Origin: Octopus sinensis
Taxonomy: Eukaryota
Direction of reading: 5' to 3'
NCBI RefSeq assembly: GCF_006345805.1
Contig: NW_021835720.1
Span: 1-38,915 of the forward strand
DNA length: 38,915 bases
Shown: one piece after another, positions 1,143-34,659 of the stretch
Numbering within the stretch: position 1 is the first letter of the stretch
How the letters are laid out: every line of letters begins with the position of its first letter
Position numbers and translations under genes: made by a program
The notes under the pieces: generated by a model
Seen by the model: the letters and a program-made list of their open reading frames with translations, nothing else
What the model was told of the DNA's origin: nothing
The model's database searches: none

Positions 1143-1809
<667 letters not shown>

Positions 1810-6077: not shown

Positions 6078-6796
6078 TAATGATGTGTAGGGCATTGCCC
6101 ATGGGCTCATCGTAGACAACATGAAGACAGGGACCTTCACTGCTGGCTAGCTAGTTAGTGAGCTGGTCCAGGAAAGGGAATTCCGGCCGTGCAAGATGAA
6201 GTCTTAAATCAAACATTTTTCTGAAAGGTAGAGGTGAAGTGTGGTGTAAACTTGTGTGGGTATACCAATGTTTCAACACCTCAATGAACTCTGACCCCTG
6301 TAAACATTGACATTAAATGTCTGACAGTGTTCATGTTGTAATATTTACAATGTTGAATTACTATGTCACTTGACTATCCTCTTTATCTTACTGTTTCTTT
6401 TTCTGTTTCAGACTATCACATCATGTTGACATAAAAGGAATTACTTCGTTCAGATGTGCCTTTGATATTTTTATCAACTTTCATCAACTAAAGGAAGACG
6501 ATATATTTATAAGTAGCCTTCATCTATACATCAACGTTTCTATATAAATATAATCTATGACAAACAACAGTGAAATATATTTCTTGTCTTCACTGTCTGG
6601 AATGTAGAGGAGGTGATTGCTTTACAAGTTTGGATAACTTTACAAACGAGTTGACAGTTTTCACCTGTTGATTTAGGTATTAAGTAAGATCACAGATGAA
6701 AGAAAGATTAACATTAAATTATTCTCTGAAAAAACTGATGCAAATGAACACAAACATATTCATGGAAAGGAAAAAAACAGTATTATTGTGATATAT

Positions 6797-8380
6797 ATGA
6801 CAAATTATCCTGTCATAATGAATAAGTTAACTGAACCTAAAAACTCTGATACAAGAGAGAAACGATATCGTTGTGATATCTGTGGTAAATCATTCTCTAG
6901 AAATTGTCACTTGACTACACATAAACGTATTCATACTGGAGAGAAACCATATCATTGTGATATCTGTGGTAAATCATTCTCTAGAAATAGTCACTTGACT
7001 ATACATCAACATATTCATACAGGAGAGAAACCATATCGTTGTGATATCTGTGGTAAATCTTTCTCTCAAAATAGTGGCTTGACTATCCATAAACGTGTTC
7101 ATACAGGAGAGAAACCTCATCATTGTGATATCTGTGGTGAATCATTCTCTCAAAAAAGTCACTTCTCTATTCACAAATGTATTCATACAGGAGAGAAGCC
7201 ATATTGTTGTAATATCTGTGGTAAATCATTTTCTGATAATGGCAATTTAACTCGACATAAACGTATTCATACAGGAGAGAAACCATATCATTGTGATATC
7301 TGTGGTAAATCATTTACTGAAAGTGGTCACTTGAATAAGCACAAGCGTATTCATACAGGAGAAAAGCCATATCATTGTGATACCTGTGGCAAGTCATTCT
7401 CTGAAAGTGGTGTCTTAACTAAACACCAGCGCATTCATACAGGAGAGAAGCCATTTCATTGTAAGATCTGTGGCAAATCATTCTCTTGTAATAGTCATTT
7501 GACTACTCATAGACGTCTTCATACTGGGGAAAAACCATATCACTGTGATATCTGTGGTAAAACATTCTCTCGAAGAATTCACTTGTCTGATCATAAACGT
7601 ATTCATACAGGAGAGAAACCTCATCATTGTGATATCTGTGGTGAATCATTCTCTCAAAAAAGTAACTTCTCTATTCACAAACGTATTCATACAGGAGAGA
7701 AGCCATATTGTTGTAATATCTGTGGTGAATCATTCATTGCAAGTGGTAGCTTGAATAAACACAAGCGCATTCATACAGGAGAGAAACCATATCATTGTAA
7801 TACCTGTGGTGAATCATTTTCTGATAATAGCACTTTAACTCAACATAAACGTGTTCATACAGGGGAAAAACCATATCATTGTGATATCTGTGGTAAATCA
7901 TTTTCTCATAATAGCACTTTAACTAAACATAAACGTATTCATACAGGAGAGAAACCATATCATTGTGATATCTGTGGTAAATCATTCTCTGAAAATAGCC
8001 ATTTGATTTGTCACAAACATATTCATACTGGAGAAAAACCATATCATTGTGATATATGTGGTAAATCATTTTTTGACAGTGGTAACTTGAATAGGCATAA
8101 GCGTGTTCATACAGGAGAGAAACCATATCATTGTGATATCTGTGGTAAATCATTTTTTGACAGTGGTAACTTGAATAGGCATAAGCGTGTTCATACAGGA
8201 GAGAAACCATATCATTGTGATATCTGTGGTAAATCATTTTTTGACAGTGGTAACTTGAATAGGCATAAGCGTATTCATACAGGAGAGAAACCATATCATT
8301 GTAATATCAGTGGTAAATCATTCTCTGGAAGAAGTGTCCTAACTAAACACCAGTGCAGGACAGAAACCATATCATTGTGA
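6797..8380 (+). CDS. C2H2 zinc-finger protein ZNF-B (17 intact fingers plus 1 degenerate; no KRAB/SCAN recognised)
   Basis: Uninterrupted ORF 6788-8380 (first ATG at 6797) of 28-aa CxxCGKSF...HxxxHTGEKP repeats. Candidate acceptor TTCTGTTTCAG ends at 6411. Confidence 0.92.
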
Positions 8381-13519: not shown

Positions 13520-15249
<1,730 letters not shown>

Positions 15250-18218: not shown

Positions 18219-18319
18219 AAGAAGGCGAAAACTTCTCACACACTTTACCGCACCAAACCAAGCTACGTCTCTATATCTCTCCGCTTCATGCACGATGCTT
18301 GCCTCCTGTGTTTTTATGA

Positions 18320-18530
18320 GTGAAAACACCAAAGCTCCACACGGCTCCGGCAGAAGGTAATTGCGAAACTTCTGCTGATTCTTTCACCACAACTTTCTCT
18401 CACTCTCTCCCCCTGCATCTTGCAGCTCACCTGCGACGGATCGGCGTCCCGTCCAGGTGGGGAACCTATATGCCAAGAAACCGGGAAACCGGCCCTTATG
18501 AGCCAGGCAAGGTTCGAGAAGGAACAAACA
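18320..18530 (+). mobile_element. SINE fragment sharing a central block with family D but with a different 3' part
   Basis: AAAGCTCCAC..GGCTCCGGCAG...TCTTTCACCACAACTTTCTCTCACTCT is shared with the minus strand of ~12865-12940; it then continues CCTGCGACGGATCGGCGTCCCGTCCAGG. Confidence 0.6.
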
Positions 18531-18699
18531 AGTATGTACACTGGTATTGCACATCCAAAAGAACATACTAGCTTTATTCCTCTCTATTCTTTACATGTCC
18601 TCTGTATTTAGGGCCCATCTCTCACTATCATGTAGCTTTGCTGTTCATACATGAACATCATACAATGTGCCTTTCACTCTGAGAGAACTTAAGTTGCCC

Positions 18700-18895
18700 A
18701 AGCTGCTTGCTTCTTCAGAGACCACCGTATCATGTCAAAAGCTTTCTGCAGGTCAACGAATTCCAATTGCAATGGTTTACTTTTAGCTAAATACATCTCT
18801 TGCAGTTGTTTTACTCAGTAGATGGCAGCAGTAATCCTTCTTCCTGGCAGAAAATCAAACTGCATCTCATCTAGTCTAATTCTGTTTCTTATTAA
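18700..18895 (-). mobile_element. RTE LINE reverse-transcriptase fragment
   Basis: RIRLDEMQFDFLPGRRITAAIY*VKQLQEMYLAKSKPLQLEFVDLQKAFD resembles the RTE RT pattern QFGF.PGR.TTDAIF..RQLQEK......L...FVDL.KAFD. Confidence 0.85.
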
Positions 18896-19337
18896 TTATA
18901 ACTTTCTTGACCTGGTCAATCAATTTTAAGGCCTCTCCTTTATGCTTGTAACATCTGACTACAACTTGATTTCCTTGTCAAGTGATGCCAGGCTCATAAG
19001 GGCCAGTTTTCTGGTTTCAGTGGCATAGAAATATCTGTACAACTTGATTAACTTTATGGGTGACAAGGGTGTATCTTACTCTGCACAATCTTAGTAAACA
19101 AAAAGTTCGTTTATATGGGGTCGTTTGTTTCCAGTTTACTAGGTAAAACATGATTTGACTCTTTGCTATTCAATAGATTGGGATATTAGGACAGGAAGAG
19201 CATCCAATTGTACACAAGGAAAATGCTGCTCCCAAGCAGGGAAAAGTAGGTGTTAAAATGGCAATGATGAAAAAAAAACCCTGAAATTTTTCATATGGGC
19301 AACCAATCACTAATGTTGATTTATCTTTTTACTTTAG

Positions 19338-19586
19338 AACCAGTTGCATTAGGAGACAATGTCACACTTCATACTGAAGTAGCCGAGATGACAGGAATTG
19401 TTTTCTGGAAAAACGACAATGGTAGATATGAATGTAACCCGACTTGTTATAATTACGGTAACTATGAAGTTACACAAGATGGTAGCAAATCTACTCTTTT
19501 GATCCAAATGGTATCAGAACAAGATTTCACTTGGCATTTTTGTGACTTGTGTCTCTGCTCTGCAAAATATACCTTAGTGACAAAAG
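19338..19586 (+). CDS. Phase 1-1 exon (249 nt) encoding an atypical Ig-like ectodomain
   Basis: Acceptor TCTTTTTACTTTAG| and donor G|GTAAG. Peptide (E)PVALGDNVTLHTEVAEMTGIVFWKNDNGRYECNPTCYNYGNYEVTQDGSKSTLLIQMVSEQDFTWHFCDLCLCSAKYTLVTK shows G..VTL, W and L.I..V...D spacing typical of Ig folds. The fold call is an inference. An alternative in-frame ATG lies at 19295. Confidence 0.7.
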
Positions 19587-19615
19587 GTAAGGAAATAACT
19601 TTTGCTAAAAATAAA

Positions 19616-19647
<32 letters not shown>

Positions 19648-19984
19648 TAAAAATAATAATAATAGTTCTTTCTAATTATGGCACAAGGTCAAGAATTTCT
19701 TGTGGAAGCGGTTCTTTGATTACATTAATTTGATTATATTTAGTCGGTCCTTTATTTCATCAACCCCAAAGGGATGAAAGGCAAAGCTGACCTTAGCAGT
19801 ATTTGAACTCAGGACAGAAAGAGTCAGAAGAAATTCCACTGAACACTTTTTTCTGGTGCAGCAACAACAACAACAATAACAATAACAACAACAACAGCAA
19901 CAACAACAACAACAACAACAACCTCAGTGCAAATATTTTTATAATACTTCAGCAAATTCAAAGTTTGTATCACATAGCATTGCT

Positions 19985-20115
19985 GTTCATATACAGGCAT
20001 CATACAACGTGACTTTCACTCTGAGAGAACACAACCCATCGCCTGGTACAGGAATCGAAACCACAATCTTACGATCATGAGTCCAACACCCTAACTATTA
20101 AGCCACGTGCCTCCA
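19985..20115 (-). mobile_element. tRNA-headed SINE fragment (related piece at ~18625-18690)
   Basis: Minus strand GGAGGCACGTGGCTTAATAGTTAGGGTGTTGGACTCATGATCGTAAGATTGTGGTTTCGATTCC. Confidence 0.65.
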
Positions 20116-20541
20116 CCTAATGCTATATAACCCTTCTAAATAATCGACTCATCTGTTGACCTTACATTTTTGTGTTAGAAAGAAGAAATTTAATCCCCTT
20201 TGCTAATGCAACATAACCTTTCTAATTGATGGATTAATCTGAAGGAGAACATCTAATCATTTAGACATAATAATCTGGGATATTGGTGTGTGTTGATCCG
20301 TTTCTTACCATATTTCTGCTGAAATGCATTGCCTTTGTTTCAATAAATTTTGGAAATGATAAAGAATTTAACCTTATCATTACTAAACTATTGTTTGGAA
20401 CATAAGGAAGGTTTTCTTTAAATCTCTTCAAAACTGAGGATTTGTACAATAGAAACAAAAACAATTTTAAGCAGGATGGTATGAAAAGGGTTAAACCTGG
20501 CTGATGTTACTATTTTTAAAAAATTATAAACAGAAAGTATA

Positions 20542-20738
20542 TGACGTATATTTGCCATTTAAATATGGCTAACCCCTAACGGTGGATGCTACTGTAGTTT
20601 GTAGCCCCAGGAGGACACCTCCTCCAGCTGGCTATAGACACACTGGCTAGAGCTAGAGGAGGTGTCCTCCTGGGGCTACAAACTACAGTAGCATCCACCC
20701 TTAGGGGTTAGCCATATTTAAATGGCAAATATACGTCA
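20542..20738. mobile_element. Hairpin MITE, ~88-bp arms with ~20-nt loop, intronic
   Basis: TGACGTATATTTGCC...GGCAAATATACGTCA; 2 mismatches between arms. Confidence 0.9.
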
Positions 20739-20823
20739 CAATGTGTTGCAGCTACCGTTTATAACTCGCTCTGAGATTTATTAGTGCCTAAAAAGTATAT
20801 GTTTTGCTGTTCATCTTTTGCAG

Positions 20824-20960
20824 GTGAAAAAACAGAAACAACGACAACAAAAGATGCTGAAACTAATGGATCAGAAAACAGCTTACCAACCTATGCCTAT
20901 GTCTTAATTTTCATATCTGTATTTGTAGTCATCGTTATCATTAAGAAAGACCAGAACTGA
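20824..20960 (+). CDS. Terminal coding exon: Thr-rich stalk, transmembrane helix, 5-aa tail
   Basis: Acceptor CATCTTTTGCAG|, phase 1 and in frame with 19586. Reads G-EKTETTTTKDAETNGSENSLPTYAYVLIFISVFVVIVIIKKDQN*. Confidence 0.75.
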
Positions 20961-21484
20961 TATTGGCCAACCTTACTACTGACTTTCACTGATCCGGGTA
21001 GAATTGTTGGTTTTTGCATAAACTACCTCCATATTTTATGTAACATCATCATCATCATCATCGTTGGTTTGGCATCACCTTTTCCAAAACTCTGCTCCAT
21101 CTTACTCTTGCTTGTCCAATACAAGCATGGAAAAGTGGACGTTAGAATGTTGTTGTTGATGATGAAAACGATGATATGCGATTGATGATGATTGAGGATA
21201 ATAATGATTGATGGTGATGTCTGATGATTGATGATGATGATTGGTGATGATTGATGATGACGATGATGATGATGCGATTGATGATGACTTCAACTGAAAA
21301 ACTACTTTTTTTTCAATCAGTTTTGAAAATGGTGAAGAATTTCGTAAAATAGCTTTGCCATTATCAATCTGGTGTTTGGAACATAAATTAACATATATTA
21401 AACATAAATTAACATAAAATTTTGAATGGAAGGTTTTAATTTTGATCACTTTAACCCTTTTGTTACCATAAACTTGTGCATTAC

Positions 21485-21950
21485 AGGTGCCGGTGGCACG
21501 TAAAAAGCACACAGCATATTCTGTAGAGTGGTTGGTGCTAGGAAAAGGCGGCGAGCTGGCAGAATTGGTAGCATGCCGGATGAAATGCTTAGCAGTATTT
21601 CGTCTGCCTCTATGTTCTGAGTTCAAATTCCGCTGAGGTCGACTTTGCCTTTCATCCTTTCGGGGTCGATAAAATAAGTACCAGTTATGCACTGGGGTCG
21701 ATGTAATTGACTATCCTCCTTCCCCAAATTTCAGGCCTTGTGCCTATAGTAGAAAGGTTGGTGCTAGGAAGGGCATCCGGTTGTAGAAACCATGTGACAA
21801 CAGGCAATTGGAGTCGGGACAGTTTCCCGGATGACCAGATCCTGTCAAACCGTCCAATCCATGCCAGCATGGAAAGCGAACTTTGAGCGATGATAATGAT
21901 GATGATGATAATGATGGTGATGATGATGATGATGCTGATAATGATGACGA
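21485..21950 (+). mobile_element. Family C (RTE 3' end) copy interrupted by a family B SINE
   Basis: GTGCCGGTGGCACGTAAAAAGCAC... resumes after 21770 with GGGCATCC...GCATGGAAAGCG...(GAT)n. Confidence 0.85.
21545..21755 (+). mobile_element. Family B SINE with a 15-bp TSD, nested in family C
   Basis: GGTTGGTGCTAGGAA at 21530-21544 and 21756-21770; head AAGGCGGCGAGCTGGCAGAA. Confidence 0.9.
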
Positions 21951-22193
21951 TGACCTCTGTTGAAGTACACTGCCTTTATTTCAAATGACCTTGTAAAAAC
22001 CAACCAATATCAGTTGTCAAGTGATGGTAGGGACAAACACATAGACATGTATATTTAAACCAGGGGCTTCGACACAGTTTCCGTCTTCCAAATCCACTCA
22101 CAAGCCATATAAACAAGTAGTCAGTTTGATTCTTGCTGTTCCTCATGCATAGAACGATGTGTTTCATATCTTAGCAGAAAGATCACCCTCCAG

Positions 22194-22428
22194 AAGGCGG
22201 CGAGCTGGCAGAATCGGTAGCACGCCGGGCGAAATGCTTAGCGGTATTTCATCTGCCGTTACGTTCTGAGTTCAAATTCTGCCGAGGTTGACCTTGCCTT
22301 TCATCCTTTTGAAGTTGATAAAAATTAAGTACCAGTTATGCACTGGGGTCGATATAATCGACTTAACCCCTTTGCCTATACTTGTTTGTCCCCTCTGTGT
22401 TTAGCCCTTTGTGGGCAATAAAGAAATA
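22194..22428 (+). mobile_element. Family B SINE, full length
   Basis: tRNA-like head; TSD AAAGATCACCCTC at 22178-22190 and 22431-22443. Confidence 0.92.
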
Positions 22429-22639
22429 AAAAAGATCACCCTCTACGCAGATTCCTGCTTATTGCTAATTTTTATTTACACATTTCATGTTATTTTCTAT
22501 CTCTTACTTGCCCCAGCACCACTGCGGCCATGCTGGAGCATAGCCTTGAGGAAGTTTTTGTCAAACAAATCAACCCCAGTTGGGATGAGGTACTGAAGGT
22601 TGATCTCACAACGCTGAGGTTTCGGAAGGAGATAATATA

Positions 22640-22873
22640 TATTTCTTTACTACCCACAAGGGGCTAAACACAGAGAGGACAAACAAGGACAGACAAACGG
22701 ATTAAGTCGATTATATCGACCCCAGTGCATAACTGGTACTTATTTAATCGACCCCGAAAGTATGAAAGGCAAAGTCAACCTCGGCGGAATTTGAACTCAC
22801 AATGTAACGGCAGACGAATATACCACTAAGCATTTCACCCAGCGTGTTAACGATTCTGCCAGCTCGCCACCTT
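22640..22873 (-). mobile_element. Family B SINE, full length, inverted relative to 22194-22428
   Basis: TSD CG(G/T)AAGGAGATAATA at 22623-22637 and 22875-22889. Confidence 0.92.
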
Positions 22874-23454
22874 CCGTAAGGAGATAATAGAAGACTGAAA
22901 TATGTAGTACATTGCTGTAGTCAAGATGACCTGCCCACCACCACAGAATTAATATACTAAAACCTTGGTACCACATAAAAAAACCATTGGTGTTGGTACC
23001 AGGTAAAAATCACTGGTGCTGGTGCTACGTAAAAAGCACCCAGTACACTGTAAAGTGTTTGACATTAGGAAGGGCATCCAGAAGGTTAAGAGGCATGTAT
23101 GTGTATGTGTGTATGTGTATGTGTGTATATGTATACACACACACATACACACATATATATGTCTGTGTGTATGTGGTATGTGTATGTGTGTACACCGTAC
23201 AACTTGTGAGAACTGACACCTATGTTGGCATGTTTACGTCTCCATAACTTAGCGGTTCGGCAAAAGAATAAGTCCTGGGTCGATTTGTTCGAATAAAGGT
23301 GATGCTACAGCATGGCCACAATTAAAGGACTGAAACAAATAAAAGAATAACAGAATATACATACATACATACATAGATACATACACCCACACACACACAC
23401 ACACACAAATACCTACATACATACATACATACATACATACATACATACAAGCAT

Positions 23455-24395
23455 ACATGCATACATGATGGCCGTCCACTCGTAACCGAGGAAGACCACT
23501 GCCGACCTTCAGGAACATTGTGCGCTCTAGGACTAACTTATATTTTGCATTTGCGGCTCCGTTGGTGGCTAATGAGTCCTGCTCTTGACAAGCATACACG
23601 ACTGCAAACATTGCAGATCAAGCTTTCCCCATTCACTATACAAACCATGTGCTTTCGCACAGCTCGCTTAAGTTCTTCATGCTGGATACGTGCTCTCTCA
23701 AAAGTGTCGATCCCCTCCTTAACCCGCTTCCTCCATCTGTGGCGATGACAGGCATTGTTCTCCCAGTCAGTGTCCTGTATATCAAAAGCCTTTAACGAGG
23801 ACTTCACACAGTCCTTAAATCATAGCCTTGGTTTCTGCCGGAGTCTCCTTCCATTCACAAGTTCTCCATAGAGCATCTGCTTAGGAATCCTTCTATCCTC
23901 CATTCTAATAAGGTGTCCAGTCCAACGCAACCGCCGGTGCTTGTGTACCATCACCTCAATACTCAAGATATCAGCTGTCTTCAGGATCTGTGCGTCTGGA
24001 ATTTTTGAGGTCCAGCCAACATTGAGAATGTGTCTGAGACATCTCTGAGGAAAACGTTCAAGGACCCTTACCTGACGTTTGTACAGAGTCCATGTCTCAC
24101 ATGAGTAGAGAAGCGATGTCAGTACACAAGTACGGTACACAGCAACTTTTGTTCTCCTTGCGATGCCATGTTGGGACCAGACATGAGACTGAAGTGACCG
24201 GAAGGAACTATTTGCTCCCTGCAACCTGAAAGATATTTCCTCATCCAGGGAGCAAGAACGGCTGAGTGTGCTGCCCAGGTAGACAAACTTGTCTACTACC
24301 TTCAGAATTGTTCCTTCAACCAAGATAGCTGGTTCTATATATGGATTTCCTGGGGCAGGCTGGAACATTACAACAGTCTTGTCCAGGCTAATCGG
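23455..24395 (-). mobile_element. RTE-clade LINE, 5'-truncated (RT C-terminal part, zinc knuckle, 3' UTR, (TATG)n tail)
   Basis: VDKFVYLGSTLS...LLYSCETWTLY...LRWTGHLIRMEDRRIPKQMLYGEL...(TGA)FKDCVKSSLK...CNVCSRVCLSRAGLISHQR. Confidence 0.93.
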
Positions 24396-33111: not shown

Positions 33112-33329
33112 TTACAAAGAAATTCGATTGAATTCTGATGATAAACATTCAATTGCAATAAAACATTCAGTTCTTTCAAGAGCTTCTTTTAATATTTGAA
33201 GTGTACGTTTTGCCGGATCACAACTTTGAAACCATGTCAGAAGCATCTGGAAACTTTGTTCCCTAACGCTATGAGAATGGTCAAGCTTGATGATGTCCAG
33301 GTCATGTTGTTTAATTCCTAATTCCCTTC
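33112..33329 (-). CDS. Terminal coding exon of a death-domain protein (C-terminal part of the DD)
   Basis: Acceptor TTATTTCTTTTGCAG| (phase 1). (G)RELGIKQHDLDIIKLDHSHSVREQSFQMLLTWFQSCDPAKRTLQILKEALERTECFIAIECLSSEFNRISL* matches the DD pattern LG....I..I........EQ...ML..W.......T...L..AL. Candidate AATAAA near 32860 on the minus strand. Confidence 0.88.
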
Positions 33330-34659
33330 CTGCAAAAGAAATAAGAAATAATTGCAACAGCATTAATGATAATATAAAACCTGTATTAATTACGACAAAG
33401 AAATTATGTGAATAGAAGAATGAGAGATACTTAAGAAACAGGGAAATTAGAAGACATTGTTATCTATCTCTAAAGATGTTGATAAAAATAGCAAAGAATT
33501 TGAAAAAAAAGGCTGGAGAAGGAGAAGAATATTTTAAAAAAATTAATTGAAAATTACACAAGAGAAAATGCCTGGTGAACAACTGGCAGAAGAAGTGTAT
33601 GAGAGCCTAAAGAATCAACAAAGACCACCAATAGTTAGATAATTTTATCCATCTGTCCATCTTCTCTGGGCTCTATTCATAGGAGAGTTTTAGGGGTAGA
33701 GTCTTCAGGCACCTCCTTCATGCAATTCTATCAGAAGCAACCTTCATTAGAAGTTCTGAAAGGATTTCCAAACATGACCAATTGAAACTATGGATATCAT
33801 CCAACCATTTCATTCTTGCTCTACCCCTAGGTCTCCTGTCGGTTGGCTCAGCTTGAAGAATCCCTCTTGTGGTTCTTTCCTGTGATATTTTAATCACATG
33901 CCAGGATTACTGGAGCTGTGAATTCTCAATGCAGAGAAGCAGTCACTTGACCTGGAGAGACCCCAAATCTCCAGCCTGCACACCTTGTTGAGTAACGTTA
34001 CTCCAGAGACTCTTTGGAGGAATACAATCTCAGTCGTTTGATAACGTCATGTGATCAATGCCTGAAATAGTAATTTGTGATGTCTTTCCACCTATGATTA
34101 ATAGAAATTTCAAAATTATCAACATTTAAAAATATTTCAAAAATGGGGATTGTGAACCTAAATGATTTCAACCACACAAAGTAAAAATAAAATACTGTTA
34201 GGTAAATATCACATATTATAGAGGGCACTGGCTTAAGGTTTTTGGATTCATGACTTATAACAAGAACTTCTTTCATTGGATCAAGGCCACAATTTCGAAG
34301 AATTTAATACAGGAGAGGCCTTAGCAATGAGAAGAGTTTTAGTTTGTAGGCAATAAGACAAGAATCACCAACATCTACGCCATACACCTACAACACTTGG
34401 GTCCTGAAAGAATCACTGCATCCACAAACAAGCAAGTTTACAGGGAGGGCAGGTTAGGGTTAGGGAAGGACTTTGTAAGTAGCAGATATACAGGAATAGT
34501 TTGTAGTAGGAACAAGTAATAAAGGCATAGTTGATAGTTTCTGTTACCTAAGAGACAGAATTAGAAGTGGAGGAGACTATTCTGAAAGCACAGTAGTTAG
34601 AAGGAAAATGAGATGAAAAATGTACAGGGAGCTGTTAGGTCTACTGGCAACTAAGGGAT

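What the first reader, a model, noticed from the sequence alone, without database searches (positions are those of the whole stretch)
19295..20960. Hidden small type I membrane protein: atypical Cys-rich Ig-like domain, stalk, TM, no signalling tail
Two phase-matched exons splice to ~128 aa. The domain has Ig-like spacing but His-Thr where the B-strand Cys is expected, plus five cysteines (CNPTC, CDLCLC), so the disulfide pattern is non-canonical. The tail is only KKDQN, suggesting a ligand, decoy, adhesion or co-receptor role. The signal peptide is either an unseen upstream phase-1 exon or the contiguous MGNQSLMLIYLFTLEPVALG from ATG 19295. I do not recognise it as a known family; a lineage-specific surface protein is plausible.
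Basis: partly seen in the sequence, partly recalled or inferred. Interest (0 to 1): 0.72.

Follow-up and report, generated by a model that had tools for sequence, protein, structure and literature searches.

The report
Truncated octopus Ig-like membrane gene copy
The two exons are real and already annotated as an uncharacterised Octopus sinensis gene; they encode an immunoglobulin-like domain, a stalk and a membrane anchor, but this copy is a young duplicate of only the 3' end of a family gene and shows no sign of selective constraint.

Summary
Exons 19295-19586 and 20824-20960, joined by a GT-AG phase-1 intron, give 142 aa. This is identical to RefSeq XP_029657255.2 (LOC115231351 isoform X1, Octopus sinensis), so the gene is annotated, not hidden.

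The Ig call holds. AlphaFold gives a confident beta-sandwich (pLDDT 86-98 over residues 11-100). All top Foldseek PDB hits are Ig V/I-set domains. A family profile matches obscurin Ig domains (hhalign 96.7%).

The domain belongs to an uncharacterised family in octopods, with relatives in abalone. Both canonical Ig cysteines are replaced, and a conserved CxxxC is the hallmark. Only four cysteines are conserved; the fifth (C86) is private to this copy.

A typical family gene has a signal-peptide exon, then one or more pairs of a 39-nt A-strand mini-exon plus an Ig exon, then a stalk/TM exon. The window holds only the last Ig exon and the TM exon. Its "signal peptide" is the translated branch point and polypyrimidine tract of the ancestral intron.

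At least four other O. sinensis copies exist at 1-5% divergence. Variable sites are 3 synonymous to 15 non-synonymous, so there is no purifying selection.

Most likely this is a young, unconstrained 3' gene fragment. A working mini surface protein is not excluded.

The parts
18307..23466 (+). Duplicon of about 5.2 kb, shared at about 90-96% identity with four loci on O. sinensis chromosome CM016885.1 (11.70, 11.92, 12.27 and 15.85 Mb). It contains the whole gene.
   Evidence: blastn of the window against L001-L004. Locus positions.
19115..19142 (+). Optional 28-nt 5' piece (MGSFVSSLL + G) with a phase-1 donor G|GTAAAA. It corresponds to the N-terminus of the O. vulgaris model CAI9743810. It is not signal-peptide-like.
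   Evidence: Frame-0 translation; N-terminus of P0010; hydrophobicity 1.5.
19295..19337 (+). In-frame ATG plus 14 codons (MGNQSLMLIYLFTL and the first base of E15), used as the start in RefSeq isoform X1. The same bases are the 3' end of the ancestral intron: branch-point-like CTAAT at 19310-19314, a T-rich tract at 19316-19335 and the acceptor AG at 19336-19337.
   Evidence: Sequence. The acceptor is used in paralog models P0002, P0003, P0010, P0013 and P0019. The tract is 80% conserved over 40 nt in O. bimaculoides L005. The A-run just upstream varies from 9 to 11 nt between copies and shifts the frame.
19338..19586 (+). Ig-like domain exon, 249 nt, symmetric phase 1-1. It encodes E15-K97, that is strands A' to G.
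   Evidence: AlphaFold strands at 23-28, 36-39, 44-47, 57-62, 65-70 and 79-84, with pLDDT 86-98. Foldseek hits are Ig domains. Family alignment A2.
19587..20823 (+). Intron of 1237 nt, GT-AG. It contains an (AAT)n run at about 19611-19664, a block at 19667-19860 conserved with an O. bimaculoides paralog, a (CAA)n run at about 19861-19923, and a hairpin with 88-nt arms at 20542-20629 and 20651-20738. Reading through the donor gives GKEITFAKNK(N)n..SSF and a stop at 19673-19675.
20824..20960 (+). Exon for the stalk, TM segment and tail: G98-T120 is a Thr-rich stalk with an NGS sequon, Y121-I137 is the TM segment, and KKDQN is followed by TGA.
   Evidence: AlphaFold helix at 121-140. The homologous exon is intact in L001-L004, L011 and L012.

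Best explanation
The feature is the annotated gene LOC115231351 of Octopus sinensis; the window is the whole 38.9-kb unplaced scaffold.

What it encodes. There is one immunoglobulin-like (I-set-like) domain, a Thr-rich glycosylatable stalk, one transmembrane helix and a 5-residue tail. The domain belongs to an uncharacterised family found in octopods (O. sinensis, O. vulgaris, O. bimaculoides, Argonauta), with clear relatives in abalone. In this family the two canonical Ig cysteines are replaced by T/I and F. An invariant C-strand Trp and a CxxxC motif are kept. I infer that the CxxxC forms a local disulfide. Further cysteines come in subtype-specific pairs; here the pair is C83-C88.

How this copy relates to the family. 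Intact family genes have a signal-peptide exon, then one to five units of a 39-nt mini-exon (linker plus strand A) and a roughly 250-nt Ig exon, then a stalk/TM exon. The window copy holds only the last Ig exon and the TM exon. It is one of at least five 1-5% diverged copies of a roughly 5-kb duplicon. It lacks both the signal-peptide exon and the A-strand mini-exon. Its only usable ATG lies in the retained 3' end of the old intron, so the hydrophobic 'leader' is the translated polypyrimidine tract.

How it evolves. The copies accumulate amino-acid changes at about the non-coding rate.

Shown: the gene model, the family, the fold (as a prediction), the missing exons and the lack of constraint.

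Inferred: this copy is most likely a young gene fragment that is drifting and possibly transcribed, rather than a dedicated receptor. If it is translated and the accidental leader works, the product would be a minimal, tail-less surface Ig protein. Such a protein could act only by binding a partner.
For: Identity and model:
- 100% identity and 100% coverage to XP_029657255.2.
- Splice sites read directly from the sequence.

Ig fold:
- Pfam Ig_3 gives only 15.3 bits, but I-set or Ig_3 hits occur in 12 of 34 family domains.
- The abalone relatives pass the I-set gathering score, 56.8 against 23.7 bits.
- Titin and obscurin are the top hits in a PDB sequence search.
- phmmer finds obscurin at E=4e-10.
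- hhalign against an obscurin Ig profile gives 96.7% probability, E=4e-10, over 78 columns.
- AlphaFold pLDDT is 86-98 over residues 11-100.
- The top 50 Foldseek PDB hits are all Ig V/I-set domains, with target-normalised TM 0.58-0.68 among the leading hits.

Family hallmarks:
- W38 and C47 are invariant. C51, I70, W80 and D84 are conserved in at least 90% of domains.

Gene architecture:
- LOC115225372 has SP exon, mini-exon, Ig exon, mini-exon... TM exon.
- The mini-exon in L001 has a good acceptor and donor.
- It is present in L001, L004 and L005, and absent in the window, L002 and L003.
- No family-type signal-peptide exon was found in the window.

The leader is intron-derived:
- The acceptor is used in paralog models.
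- The same tract is conserved in O. bimaculoides.

No constraint:
- 3 synonymous to 15 non-synonymous variable sites in five copies.
- 0 to 9 in the Ig exon of seven copies.
- pN of 0.03-0.04 against non-coding divergence of 0.02-0.05.
- Six private amino-acid changes in the window copy, including an unpaired Cys.

Transcripts:
- Four different N-termini are annotated for near-identical paralogs.
- No transcript-derived protein of this subfamily is in the 15-billion-protein collection.
- A different single-domain member, with a proper signal peptide, does have a spliced transcript contig from an octopus metatranscriptome.
Against: - All seven copies examined keep an open frame, identical splice sites and every family-invariant residue.
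- The leader MGNQS-LMLIYLFTL-EPVALG|D fits the h-region and -3/-1 rules of a signal peptide. This is my reading of the sequence. Its 9-residue hydrophobicity of 2.49 is in the range of genuine family leaders, 2.0-3.5.
- NCBI's pipeline models the gene as protein-coding with two isoforms.
- The ratio of 0 synonymous to 9 non-synonymous changes in the Ig exon could reflect diversifying selection rather than drift (P about 0.05-0.12, my calculation).
- The subfamily is only about 40-47% identical to its nearest multi-domain relatives. Its ancestor must therefore have been a constrained gene for most of its history.
- No RNA-seq, SignalP or expression data could be consulted.
Confidence: 0.6

Rival explanations
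1. This is a functional minimal type I surface protein. After 5' truncation the duplicate recruited the translated polypyrimidine tract as a working signal peptide. The tail-less single Ig domain acts as a decoy, ligand or co-receptor, and the paralogs diversify under positive selection.
For: - Open frames and splice sites are intact in all seven copies.
- The leader has signal-peptide-like hydrophobicity and an A-x-G cleavage motif (and reading).
- There are 0 synonymous to 9 non-synonymous changes in the Ig exon.
- Short tails are normal in the family, as in P0015 and P0024.
- A transcript-supported single-domain member exists.
Against: - Cleavage after G20 would remove the A' strand. Strand A, encoded by the mini-exon, is missing altogether.
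- The excess of non-synonymous changes is not significant and equals the non-coding rate.
- The window copy gained an odd fifth Cys.
- The region just upstream of the ATG shifts frame between copies.
- Paralog models use the acceptor inside the 'leader'.
- No transcript-derived sequences were found for this subfamily.
Confidence: 0.28
2. The true first exons (signal peptide and A strand) exist but were not seen. They could lie in non-homologous sequence upstream or beyond the scaffold, and splice into the acceptor at 19336-19337.
For: - The exon is a symmetric phase 1-1 exon with a strong acceptor.
- Paralog L001 has a mini-exon 2 kb upstream and a further 5' exon 9.9 kb upstream.
- A 28-nt phase-1 piece at 19115-19142 is used in an O. 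vulgaris model.
Against: - Neither tblastn nor blastn finds the mini-exon or any family leader in the 19 kb upstream.
- Homology to the paralogs stops at 18307, 1 kb upstream of the exon.
- Even the paralogs with the mini-exon have no convincing signal-peptide exon. Their annotated leader has an h-region of only about 9 residues.
Confidence: 0.08
3. The product is not secretory. Without a working leader, or when started at M32 as in the models for LOC115225077 and LOC118768220, the C-terminal TM segment would make it a tail-anchored protein with a partial Ig domain in the cytosol.
For: - RefSeq models of two paralogs start at M32.
- The TM segment ends 5 residues from the C-terminus.
- The domain lacks the canonical disulfide.
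Against: - Intact family members have clear signal peptides, N-glycosylation sequons and conserved cysteine pairs, which point to an extracellular domain.
- A domain lacking strands A to B would not fold.
Confidence: 0.04

Closest known systems
I-set immunoglobulin domains of obscurin, titin and MyBP-C (Pfam PF07679)
   Same: - Predicted beta-sandwich with the same strand order.
- C-strand Trp and an E-strand 'STL.I' motif.
- Aligned over 78 columns by hhalign at 96.7%.
- Top PDB sequence hits and fold hits.
- Many of these domains also lack the B-F disulfide (general knowledge).
   Different: - Those are intracellular muscle proteins in long arrays. This domain is in a family with signal peptides, sequons and a TM anchor.
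- It carries a roughly 6-residue insertion with CxxxC after strand C'.
- It does not reach the Pfam gathering score (15.3 against 30 bits for Ig_3).
Uncharacterised multi-domain octopus proteins (e.g. LOC115225115, LOC115225372, O. bimaculoides LOC106867739) and abalone proteins (e.g. Haliotis rufescens LOC124119024)
   Same: - Same domain family: E from 4e-37 down to 2e-13, with shared W, CxxxC (CNPTC against abalone CNPSC), I, W and D positions.
- Same stalk/TM exon type and same exon phases.
   Different: - Those genes have a signal-peptide exon and one to five domain units, each preceded by the A-strand mini-exon.
- The window gene has one domain and neither of those exons.
- Its second cysteine pair (C83-C88) is the membrane-proximal-domain subtype.
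Small cell-surface Ig proteins without the canonical disulfide or without a signalling tail (CD2 domain 1, CD58, CD79b-type chains)
   Same: One or two Ig domains, a stalk and a TM segment. CD2 and CD79b appear among the weak PDB sequence hits.
   Different: There is no detectable specific homology (E 0.17-1). The functional analogy is only an inference.
Partial (5'-truncated) segmental duplicates of genes
   Same: Several 1-5% diverged copies of a roughly 5-kb unit. Upstream exons are missing, copies have different upstream breakpoints, dN is about equal to the non-coding rate, and the annotated 5' ends are heterogeneous.
   Different: No copy carries a stop or a frameshift, and splice sites are intact. 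None is therefore a demonstrable pseudogene.

Membership tests
Immunoglobulin superfamily (I-set-like fold) | Two-sheet Greek-key beta-sandwich resembling solved Ig domains | tested here: met
   The AlphaFold model has pLDDT 86-98 over residues 11-100. All of the top 50 Foldseek PDB hits are Ig V/I-set domains, with E from 2e-4 to 1e-3. This is a prediction, not a solved structure.
Immunoglobulin superfamily (I-set-like fold) | Sequence match to curated Ig profiles at the curated threshold | tested here: inconclusive
   The window protein scores Ig_3 15.3 bits against a cut-off of 30. The abalone relatives pass I-set (56.8 against 23.7 bits) and octopus P0015 scores 23.6. hhalign against obscurin Ig domains gives 96.7%.
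Immunoglobulin superfamily (I-set-like fold) | Canonical B-strand to F-strand disulfide | tested here: not met
   The B position is T27 (I/T/V across the family) and the F position is F82. The absence is family-wide. It is also known in other bona fide Ig domains, so it does not exclude the fold.
Immunoglobulin superfamily (I-set-like fold) | Invariant C-strand Trp | tested here: met
   W38 is invariant in 34 of 34 domains.
Octopod/abalone CxxxC Ig-like family (unnamed) | CxxxC after strand C', plus conserved I70, W80 and D84 | tested here: met
   C47 is invariant. C51, I70, W80 and D84 are conserved in at least 90% of domains. E-values are 4e-37 to 2e-13 against family members.
Octopod/abalone CxxxC Ig-like family (unnamed) | Signal-peptide exon and 39-nt A-strand mini-exon before the Ig exon | tested here: not met
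   Both are present in L010, and the mini-exon is present in L001, L004 and L005. Neither was found anywhere in the window.
Octopod/abalone CxxxC Ig-like family (unnamed) | Stalk/TM exon after the last Ig exon, joined in phase 1 | tested here: met
Type I membrane protein | Cleavable N-terminal signal peptide | not testable with these tools
   No signal-peptide predictor or experiment was available. The leader has an h-region of 9 residues (hydrophobicity 2.49) and an A-L-G|D site. However, it is the translated splice-acceptor region.
Type I membrane protein | Single TM helix with positive residues on the cytoplasmic side | tested here: met
   Y121-I137 is followed by KK. AlphaFold places a helix at 121-140.
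Pseudogene / decaying gene fragment | Disabling mutations (stop, frameshift or lost splice site) | tested here: not met
   The ORF and the GT-AG sites are intact in the window and in six other copies.
Pseudogene / decaying gene fragment | Loss of essential exons and neutral substitution pattern | tested here: met
   Exons are missing. Variable sites are 3 synonymous to 15 non-synonymous, and pN is about equal to non-coding divergence. The numbers are small.

The most novel reading that the evidence does not exclude
The copies may not be decaying. They could be newly born minimal surface proteins whose signal peptide was created by translating the polypyrimidine tract of a retained intron end. 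They would belong to an octopod Ig-like receptor family that diversifies quickly: the Ig exon shows 0 synonymous to 9 non-synonymous changes, exons have diverged far more than an adjacent intron block, and one paralog carries tandem alternative TM exons. That would make this a candidate diversified recognition family in cephalopods.
Probability: 0.2. Interest if true: 0.55.

Novelty: new member of a known kind. Interest (0 to 1): 0.3.

Why it matters
By itself this locus matters little. It is an annotated, uncharacterised, probably drifting duplicate.

The useful outcome is at the family level. An unnamed Ig-like family of octopods and abalone can now be defined by four features:
- a fold, as predicted;
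- hallmark residues (W, CxxxC, I, W, D);
- a modular exon plan: a mini-exon for strand A plus an Ig exon;
- a cluster on one chromosome.

No paper in the searched library mentions these loci. If some members prove to be expressed on haemocytes, neurons or suckers, the family would be a candidate recognition or adhesion system in cephalopods.

The locus also shows how gene predictors and readers can mistake a translated polypyrimidine tract for a signal peptide.

Tried and rejected
1. I searched the window for the paralogs' 5' exons (MSVFIYLC, LARTESYNISQS), for six other family mini-exon peptides and for twelve family signal peptides, by tblastn and blastn. Only noise came back.

2. I first thought locus L001 held a tandem duplicate. 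This was an artefact: one FASTA file held both L001 and L002. It is corrected.

3. A second search of the word-indexed protein database, using the family alignment, added only one abalone protein.

4. A weak minus-strand protein similarity at 19059-19166 to the F-G strands (E=0.058) has no DNA-level support. 328 of 500 shuffles reach its score, so I rejected it as chance.

5. 'WFLHKLPPY' at 21008-21034 resembles a juxtamembrane motif of P0021 (E=0.29). A stop lies just upstream in that frame, so I treat it as probably chance.

6. ARAGORN and Rfam found nothing in the window, so the tRNA-like stretch in the intron is not a tRNA gene.

7. Literature searches by LOC identifiers and by topic found nothing on this family.

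8. P0015 could not be located in the contig index.

9. Cysteine distances in the model could not be measured, because coordinates are not returned. The disulfide pairing is therefore inferred only from co-variation of cysteine positions in alignment A2.
Full report
**1. The observation**

The window is AT-rich animal DNA full of microsatellites, SINE-like repeats and C2H2 zinc-finger ORFs. At the stated place there is:
- an ATG at 19295;
- an open frame to a consensus donor (AAAAG|GTAAGG, exon end 19586);
- a 1237-nt intron;
- a strong acceptor (ttcatcttttgcag|GTG, exon start 20824);
- a stop at 20958-20960.

The exons join in phase 1 and give 142 aa. The internal exon, 19338-19586, is 249 nt and symmetric phase 1-1.

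**2. Identity**

The 142-aa product is 100% identical over its full length to XP_029657255.2, [quoted passage not shown]. The only contig carrying it is 38,915 nt long, so the window is a whole unplaced scaffold.

Close paralogs (84-94% protein identity) are:
- LOC115225077, LOC118768220, LOC115225463 and LOC118768178, at 11.70, 11.92, 12.27 and 15.85 Mb of chromosome CM016885.1;
- three O. vulgaris genes.

In all of them C86 is Tyr. Only C47, C51, C83 and C88 are conserved.

**3. The domain is Ig-like**

Sequence evidence for the window protein alone is weak: Pfam Ig_3 at E=0.029 and 15.3 bits, against a cut-off of 30. The wider evidence is consistent.

- A phmmer scan of 1.84 billion representatives with the 83-aa ectodomain gave 38 hits at E<=1e-3. 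These were multi-domain octopus proteins (4e-37, 4e-36), abalone proteins (7e-24 to 2e-13), vertebrate obscurins (4e-10 and weaker) and bacterial Ig-like repeat proteins.
- In a 34-domain alignment (A2), W38 and C47 are invariant. C51, I70, W80 and D84 are conserved in at least 90% of domains.
- Pfam I-set or Ig_3 is the commonest weak hit among members (12 of 34).
- The abalone relatives pass the I-set gathering score, and octopus P0015 misses it by 0.1 bit.
- The profile's best PDB sequence hits are titin, obscurin, CD79b and CD2.
- hhalign of the family profile against a profile of obscurin-type Ig domains gives 96.7% probability, E=4e-10, over 78 columns. The template domains were picked with the family HMM, which is mildly circular.
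- AlphaFold2 with A2 gives pLDDT 86-98 for residues 11-100, seven or eight strands, and a C-terminal helix at 121-140.
- Foldseek against the PDB returns only Ig V/I-set domains among its top 50: antibody VL and VHH, MyBP-C, obscurin, Kirrel3 D1, sDscam and CD8a. E runs from 2e-4 to 1e-3, and target-normalised TM is 0.58-0.68 among the leading hits.

**4. Cysteines**

By the profile alignments, the canonical B-strand Cys position is T27 (I/T/V in the family) and the canonical F-strand Cys position is F82. The classical disulfide is absent family-wide.

The CxxxC pair is always present together, or as CxxxxC in two domains. The other cysteines occur as subtype-specific pairs:
- WKC with KEC in most octopus domains;
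- C83 with C88 in membrane-proximal domains such as this one;
- an N-terminal with a C-terminal Cys in abalone.

From this co-variation I infer C47-C51 and C83-C88 disulfides. This was not measured. C86 is a private TAT-to-TGT change of the window copy and leaves an odd cysteine.

**5. Family gene plan, and what the window lacks**

In the two-domain gene LOC115225372 the order is:
- a signal-peptide exon (MDVHMLFFCVFALCFC, GT donor);
- a 39-nt mini-exon (SAKTESYEIIQN);
- a roughly 250-nt Ig exon;
- further mini-exon and Ig-exon units;
- a stalk/TM exon.

The mini-exon supplies the end of the leader or linker and strand A (consensus Y-x-I-x-Q). Paralog L001 has such a mini-exon ((C)LARTESYNISQS, with a good acceptor and donor) 2.0 kb upstream of its Ig exon. 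L004 and the O. bimaculoides locus L005 have it too. L002 has a deletion spanning it, and L003 and the window lack it.

Homology between the window and all paralogs starts at 18307, 1 kb upstream of the Ig exon, and ends at 23466. No family leader or mini-exon is detectable anywhere in the 19 kb upstream. None of the single-domain loci has a recognisable family signal-peptide exon.

Gene models for these near-identical paralogs have four different N-termini:
- MGNQS...;
- MAMMKKKNPEIFHMGNQS...;
- MSVFIYLC-LARTESYNISQS-;
- MGSFVSSLL-;
- or they simply start at M32.

This is what one expects when no genuine first exon exists.

**6. The "signal peptide"**

Codons 5-14 (SLMLIYLFTL) are tca CTA ATg ttg att tat ctt ttt act tTA G. 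That is a branch-point-like CTAAT 23-27 nt upstream of the AG, then a T-rich tract, then the acceptor.
- Paralog models splice exactly there.
- The same tract precedes the homologous exon of a 40%-identical O. bimaculoides paralog.
- Just upstream of the ATG, an A-run of 9 to 11 nt differs between copies and changes the frame.

The hydrophobic stretch is therefore a by-product of T-rich codons. It nevertheless looks like a signal peptide: 9-residue hydrophobicity of 2.49 against 2.0-3.5 for genuine leaders, with Pro at -5 and A-x-G before D21. Accidental function cannot be excluded. Cleavage there would remove strand A'.

**7. Selection**

Among the five O. sinensis copies, codons 15-142 have 3 synonymous and 15 non-synonymous variable sites. 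About 21-28% synonymous is expected under neutrality. Pairwise pN of 0.03-0.04 equals the non-coding divergence of 0.02-0.05.

Adding two O. vulgaris copies, the Ig exon has 0 synonymous and 9 non-synonymous sites. The probability of 0 in 9 under neutrality is about 0.05-0.12 by my calculation. L004 and L011 are orthologues, with an identical exon and 0.5% upstream divergence, so the paralogs predate the split between O. sinensis and O. vulgaris.

There is no sign of purifying selection. Drift and weak diversifying selection cannot be separated with these numbers. The window copy is the most diverged and has six private replacements.

**8. Expression evidence**

None could be obtained for this copy. 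The protein collection, which includes assemblies of public sequencing runs, contains no run-derived member of this subfamily. A different single-domain, short-tailed member (P0024) is encoded contiguously on a 1,067-nt contig from SRR3401912, described as an octopus metatranscriptome in PMC11662614. It has a proper leader and A strand, so such small family proteins are really made.

**9. Verdict**

However, the locus is an annotated, recently duplicated 3' module of an uncharacterised octopod/abalone Ig-like family. It lacks the family's leader and A-strand exons and evolves without detectable constraint.

- Best estimate (about 0.6): a drifting gene fragment that may be transcribed.
- About 0.28: a working tail-less mini surface protein that uses the accidental leader.
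- Smaller probabilities: an unseen 5' exon, or a non-secretory product.

This is a new member of a known kind (the Ig superfamily). Interest is modest and lies mainly in defining the family.

Noticed in passing
window 19587-19860 vs L005 13028-13260: Between the window gene and a 40%-identical O. bimaculoides paralog, the Ig exon has pS=0.50 and 63.5% nucleotide identity. The first ~20 nt of the intron and a ~190-nt block after the (AAT)n run are 84-89% identical and collinear. Three divergent paralog models (P0019, P0025, P0036) end in the same read-through tail, GKEITSANNNNNNSF. This could be a conserved splicing-control or soluble-isoform element, a shared old SINE with its (ATT)n tail, or gene conversion.
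   Followed up: partly
L005 14559-15319 (O. bimaculoides LGKD02011600.1): Four tandem exons each encode a TM segment plus an F..PY.WIKTR..W.S..KY cytoplasmic motif, downstream of one Ig exon. They may be alternative TM/cytoplasmic exons. The annotated model P0019 ignores them and reads through the donor.
   Followed up: partly
window 20542-20629 / 20651-20738: A near-perfect hairpin (88-nt arms, 98% complementary, 21-nt loop) lies inside the gene's intron. It is also present in the paralogous introns at about 91% identity.
   Followed up: partly
window 33112-33363 (-): An 83-aa ORF matches the Pfam Death domain above the curated cut-off (30.3 against 22.6 bits). It is probably an exon of a death-domain gene on the minus strand.
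   Followed up: partly
window 1236-1809 (+), 6788-8380 (+), 13571-14011 (-), 14626-15249 (-): There are several C2H2 zinc-finger ORFs, one of 530 aa with about 17 fingers. This is typical of the octopus zinc-finger expansion.
   Followed up: partly
window 23538-24368 (-): ORFs resembling the C-terminal part of a non-LTR retrotransposon protein (my reading; no Pfam hit apart from a weak zinc finger) abut the downstream end (23466) of the 5.2-kb duplicon.
   Followed up: no
window 19586/20824 junction: RefSeq isoform X2 (141 aa, lacking G98) cannot be produced from this sequence with a GT-AG intron. The only compatible junctions are GG..GT or GT..TG. Similar 1-4-residue junction variants are annotated for the paralogs.
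   Followed up: partly
L003 and L004 (CM016885.1, 11.70 and 11.92 Mb): Two paralogous copies each lie entirely within the span of a gene call on the opposite strand with a 1146-aa product that runs over the end of each locus, presumably inside its introns.
   Followed up: no
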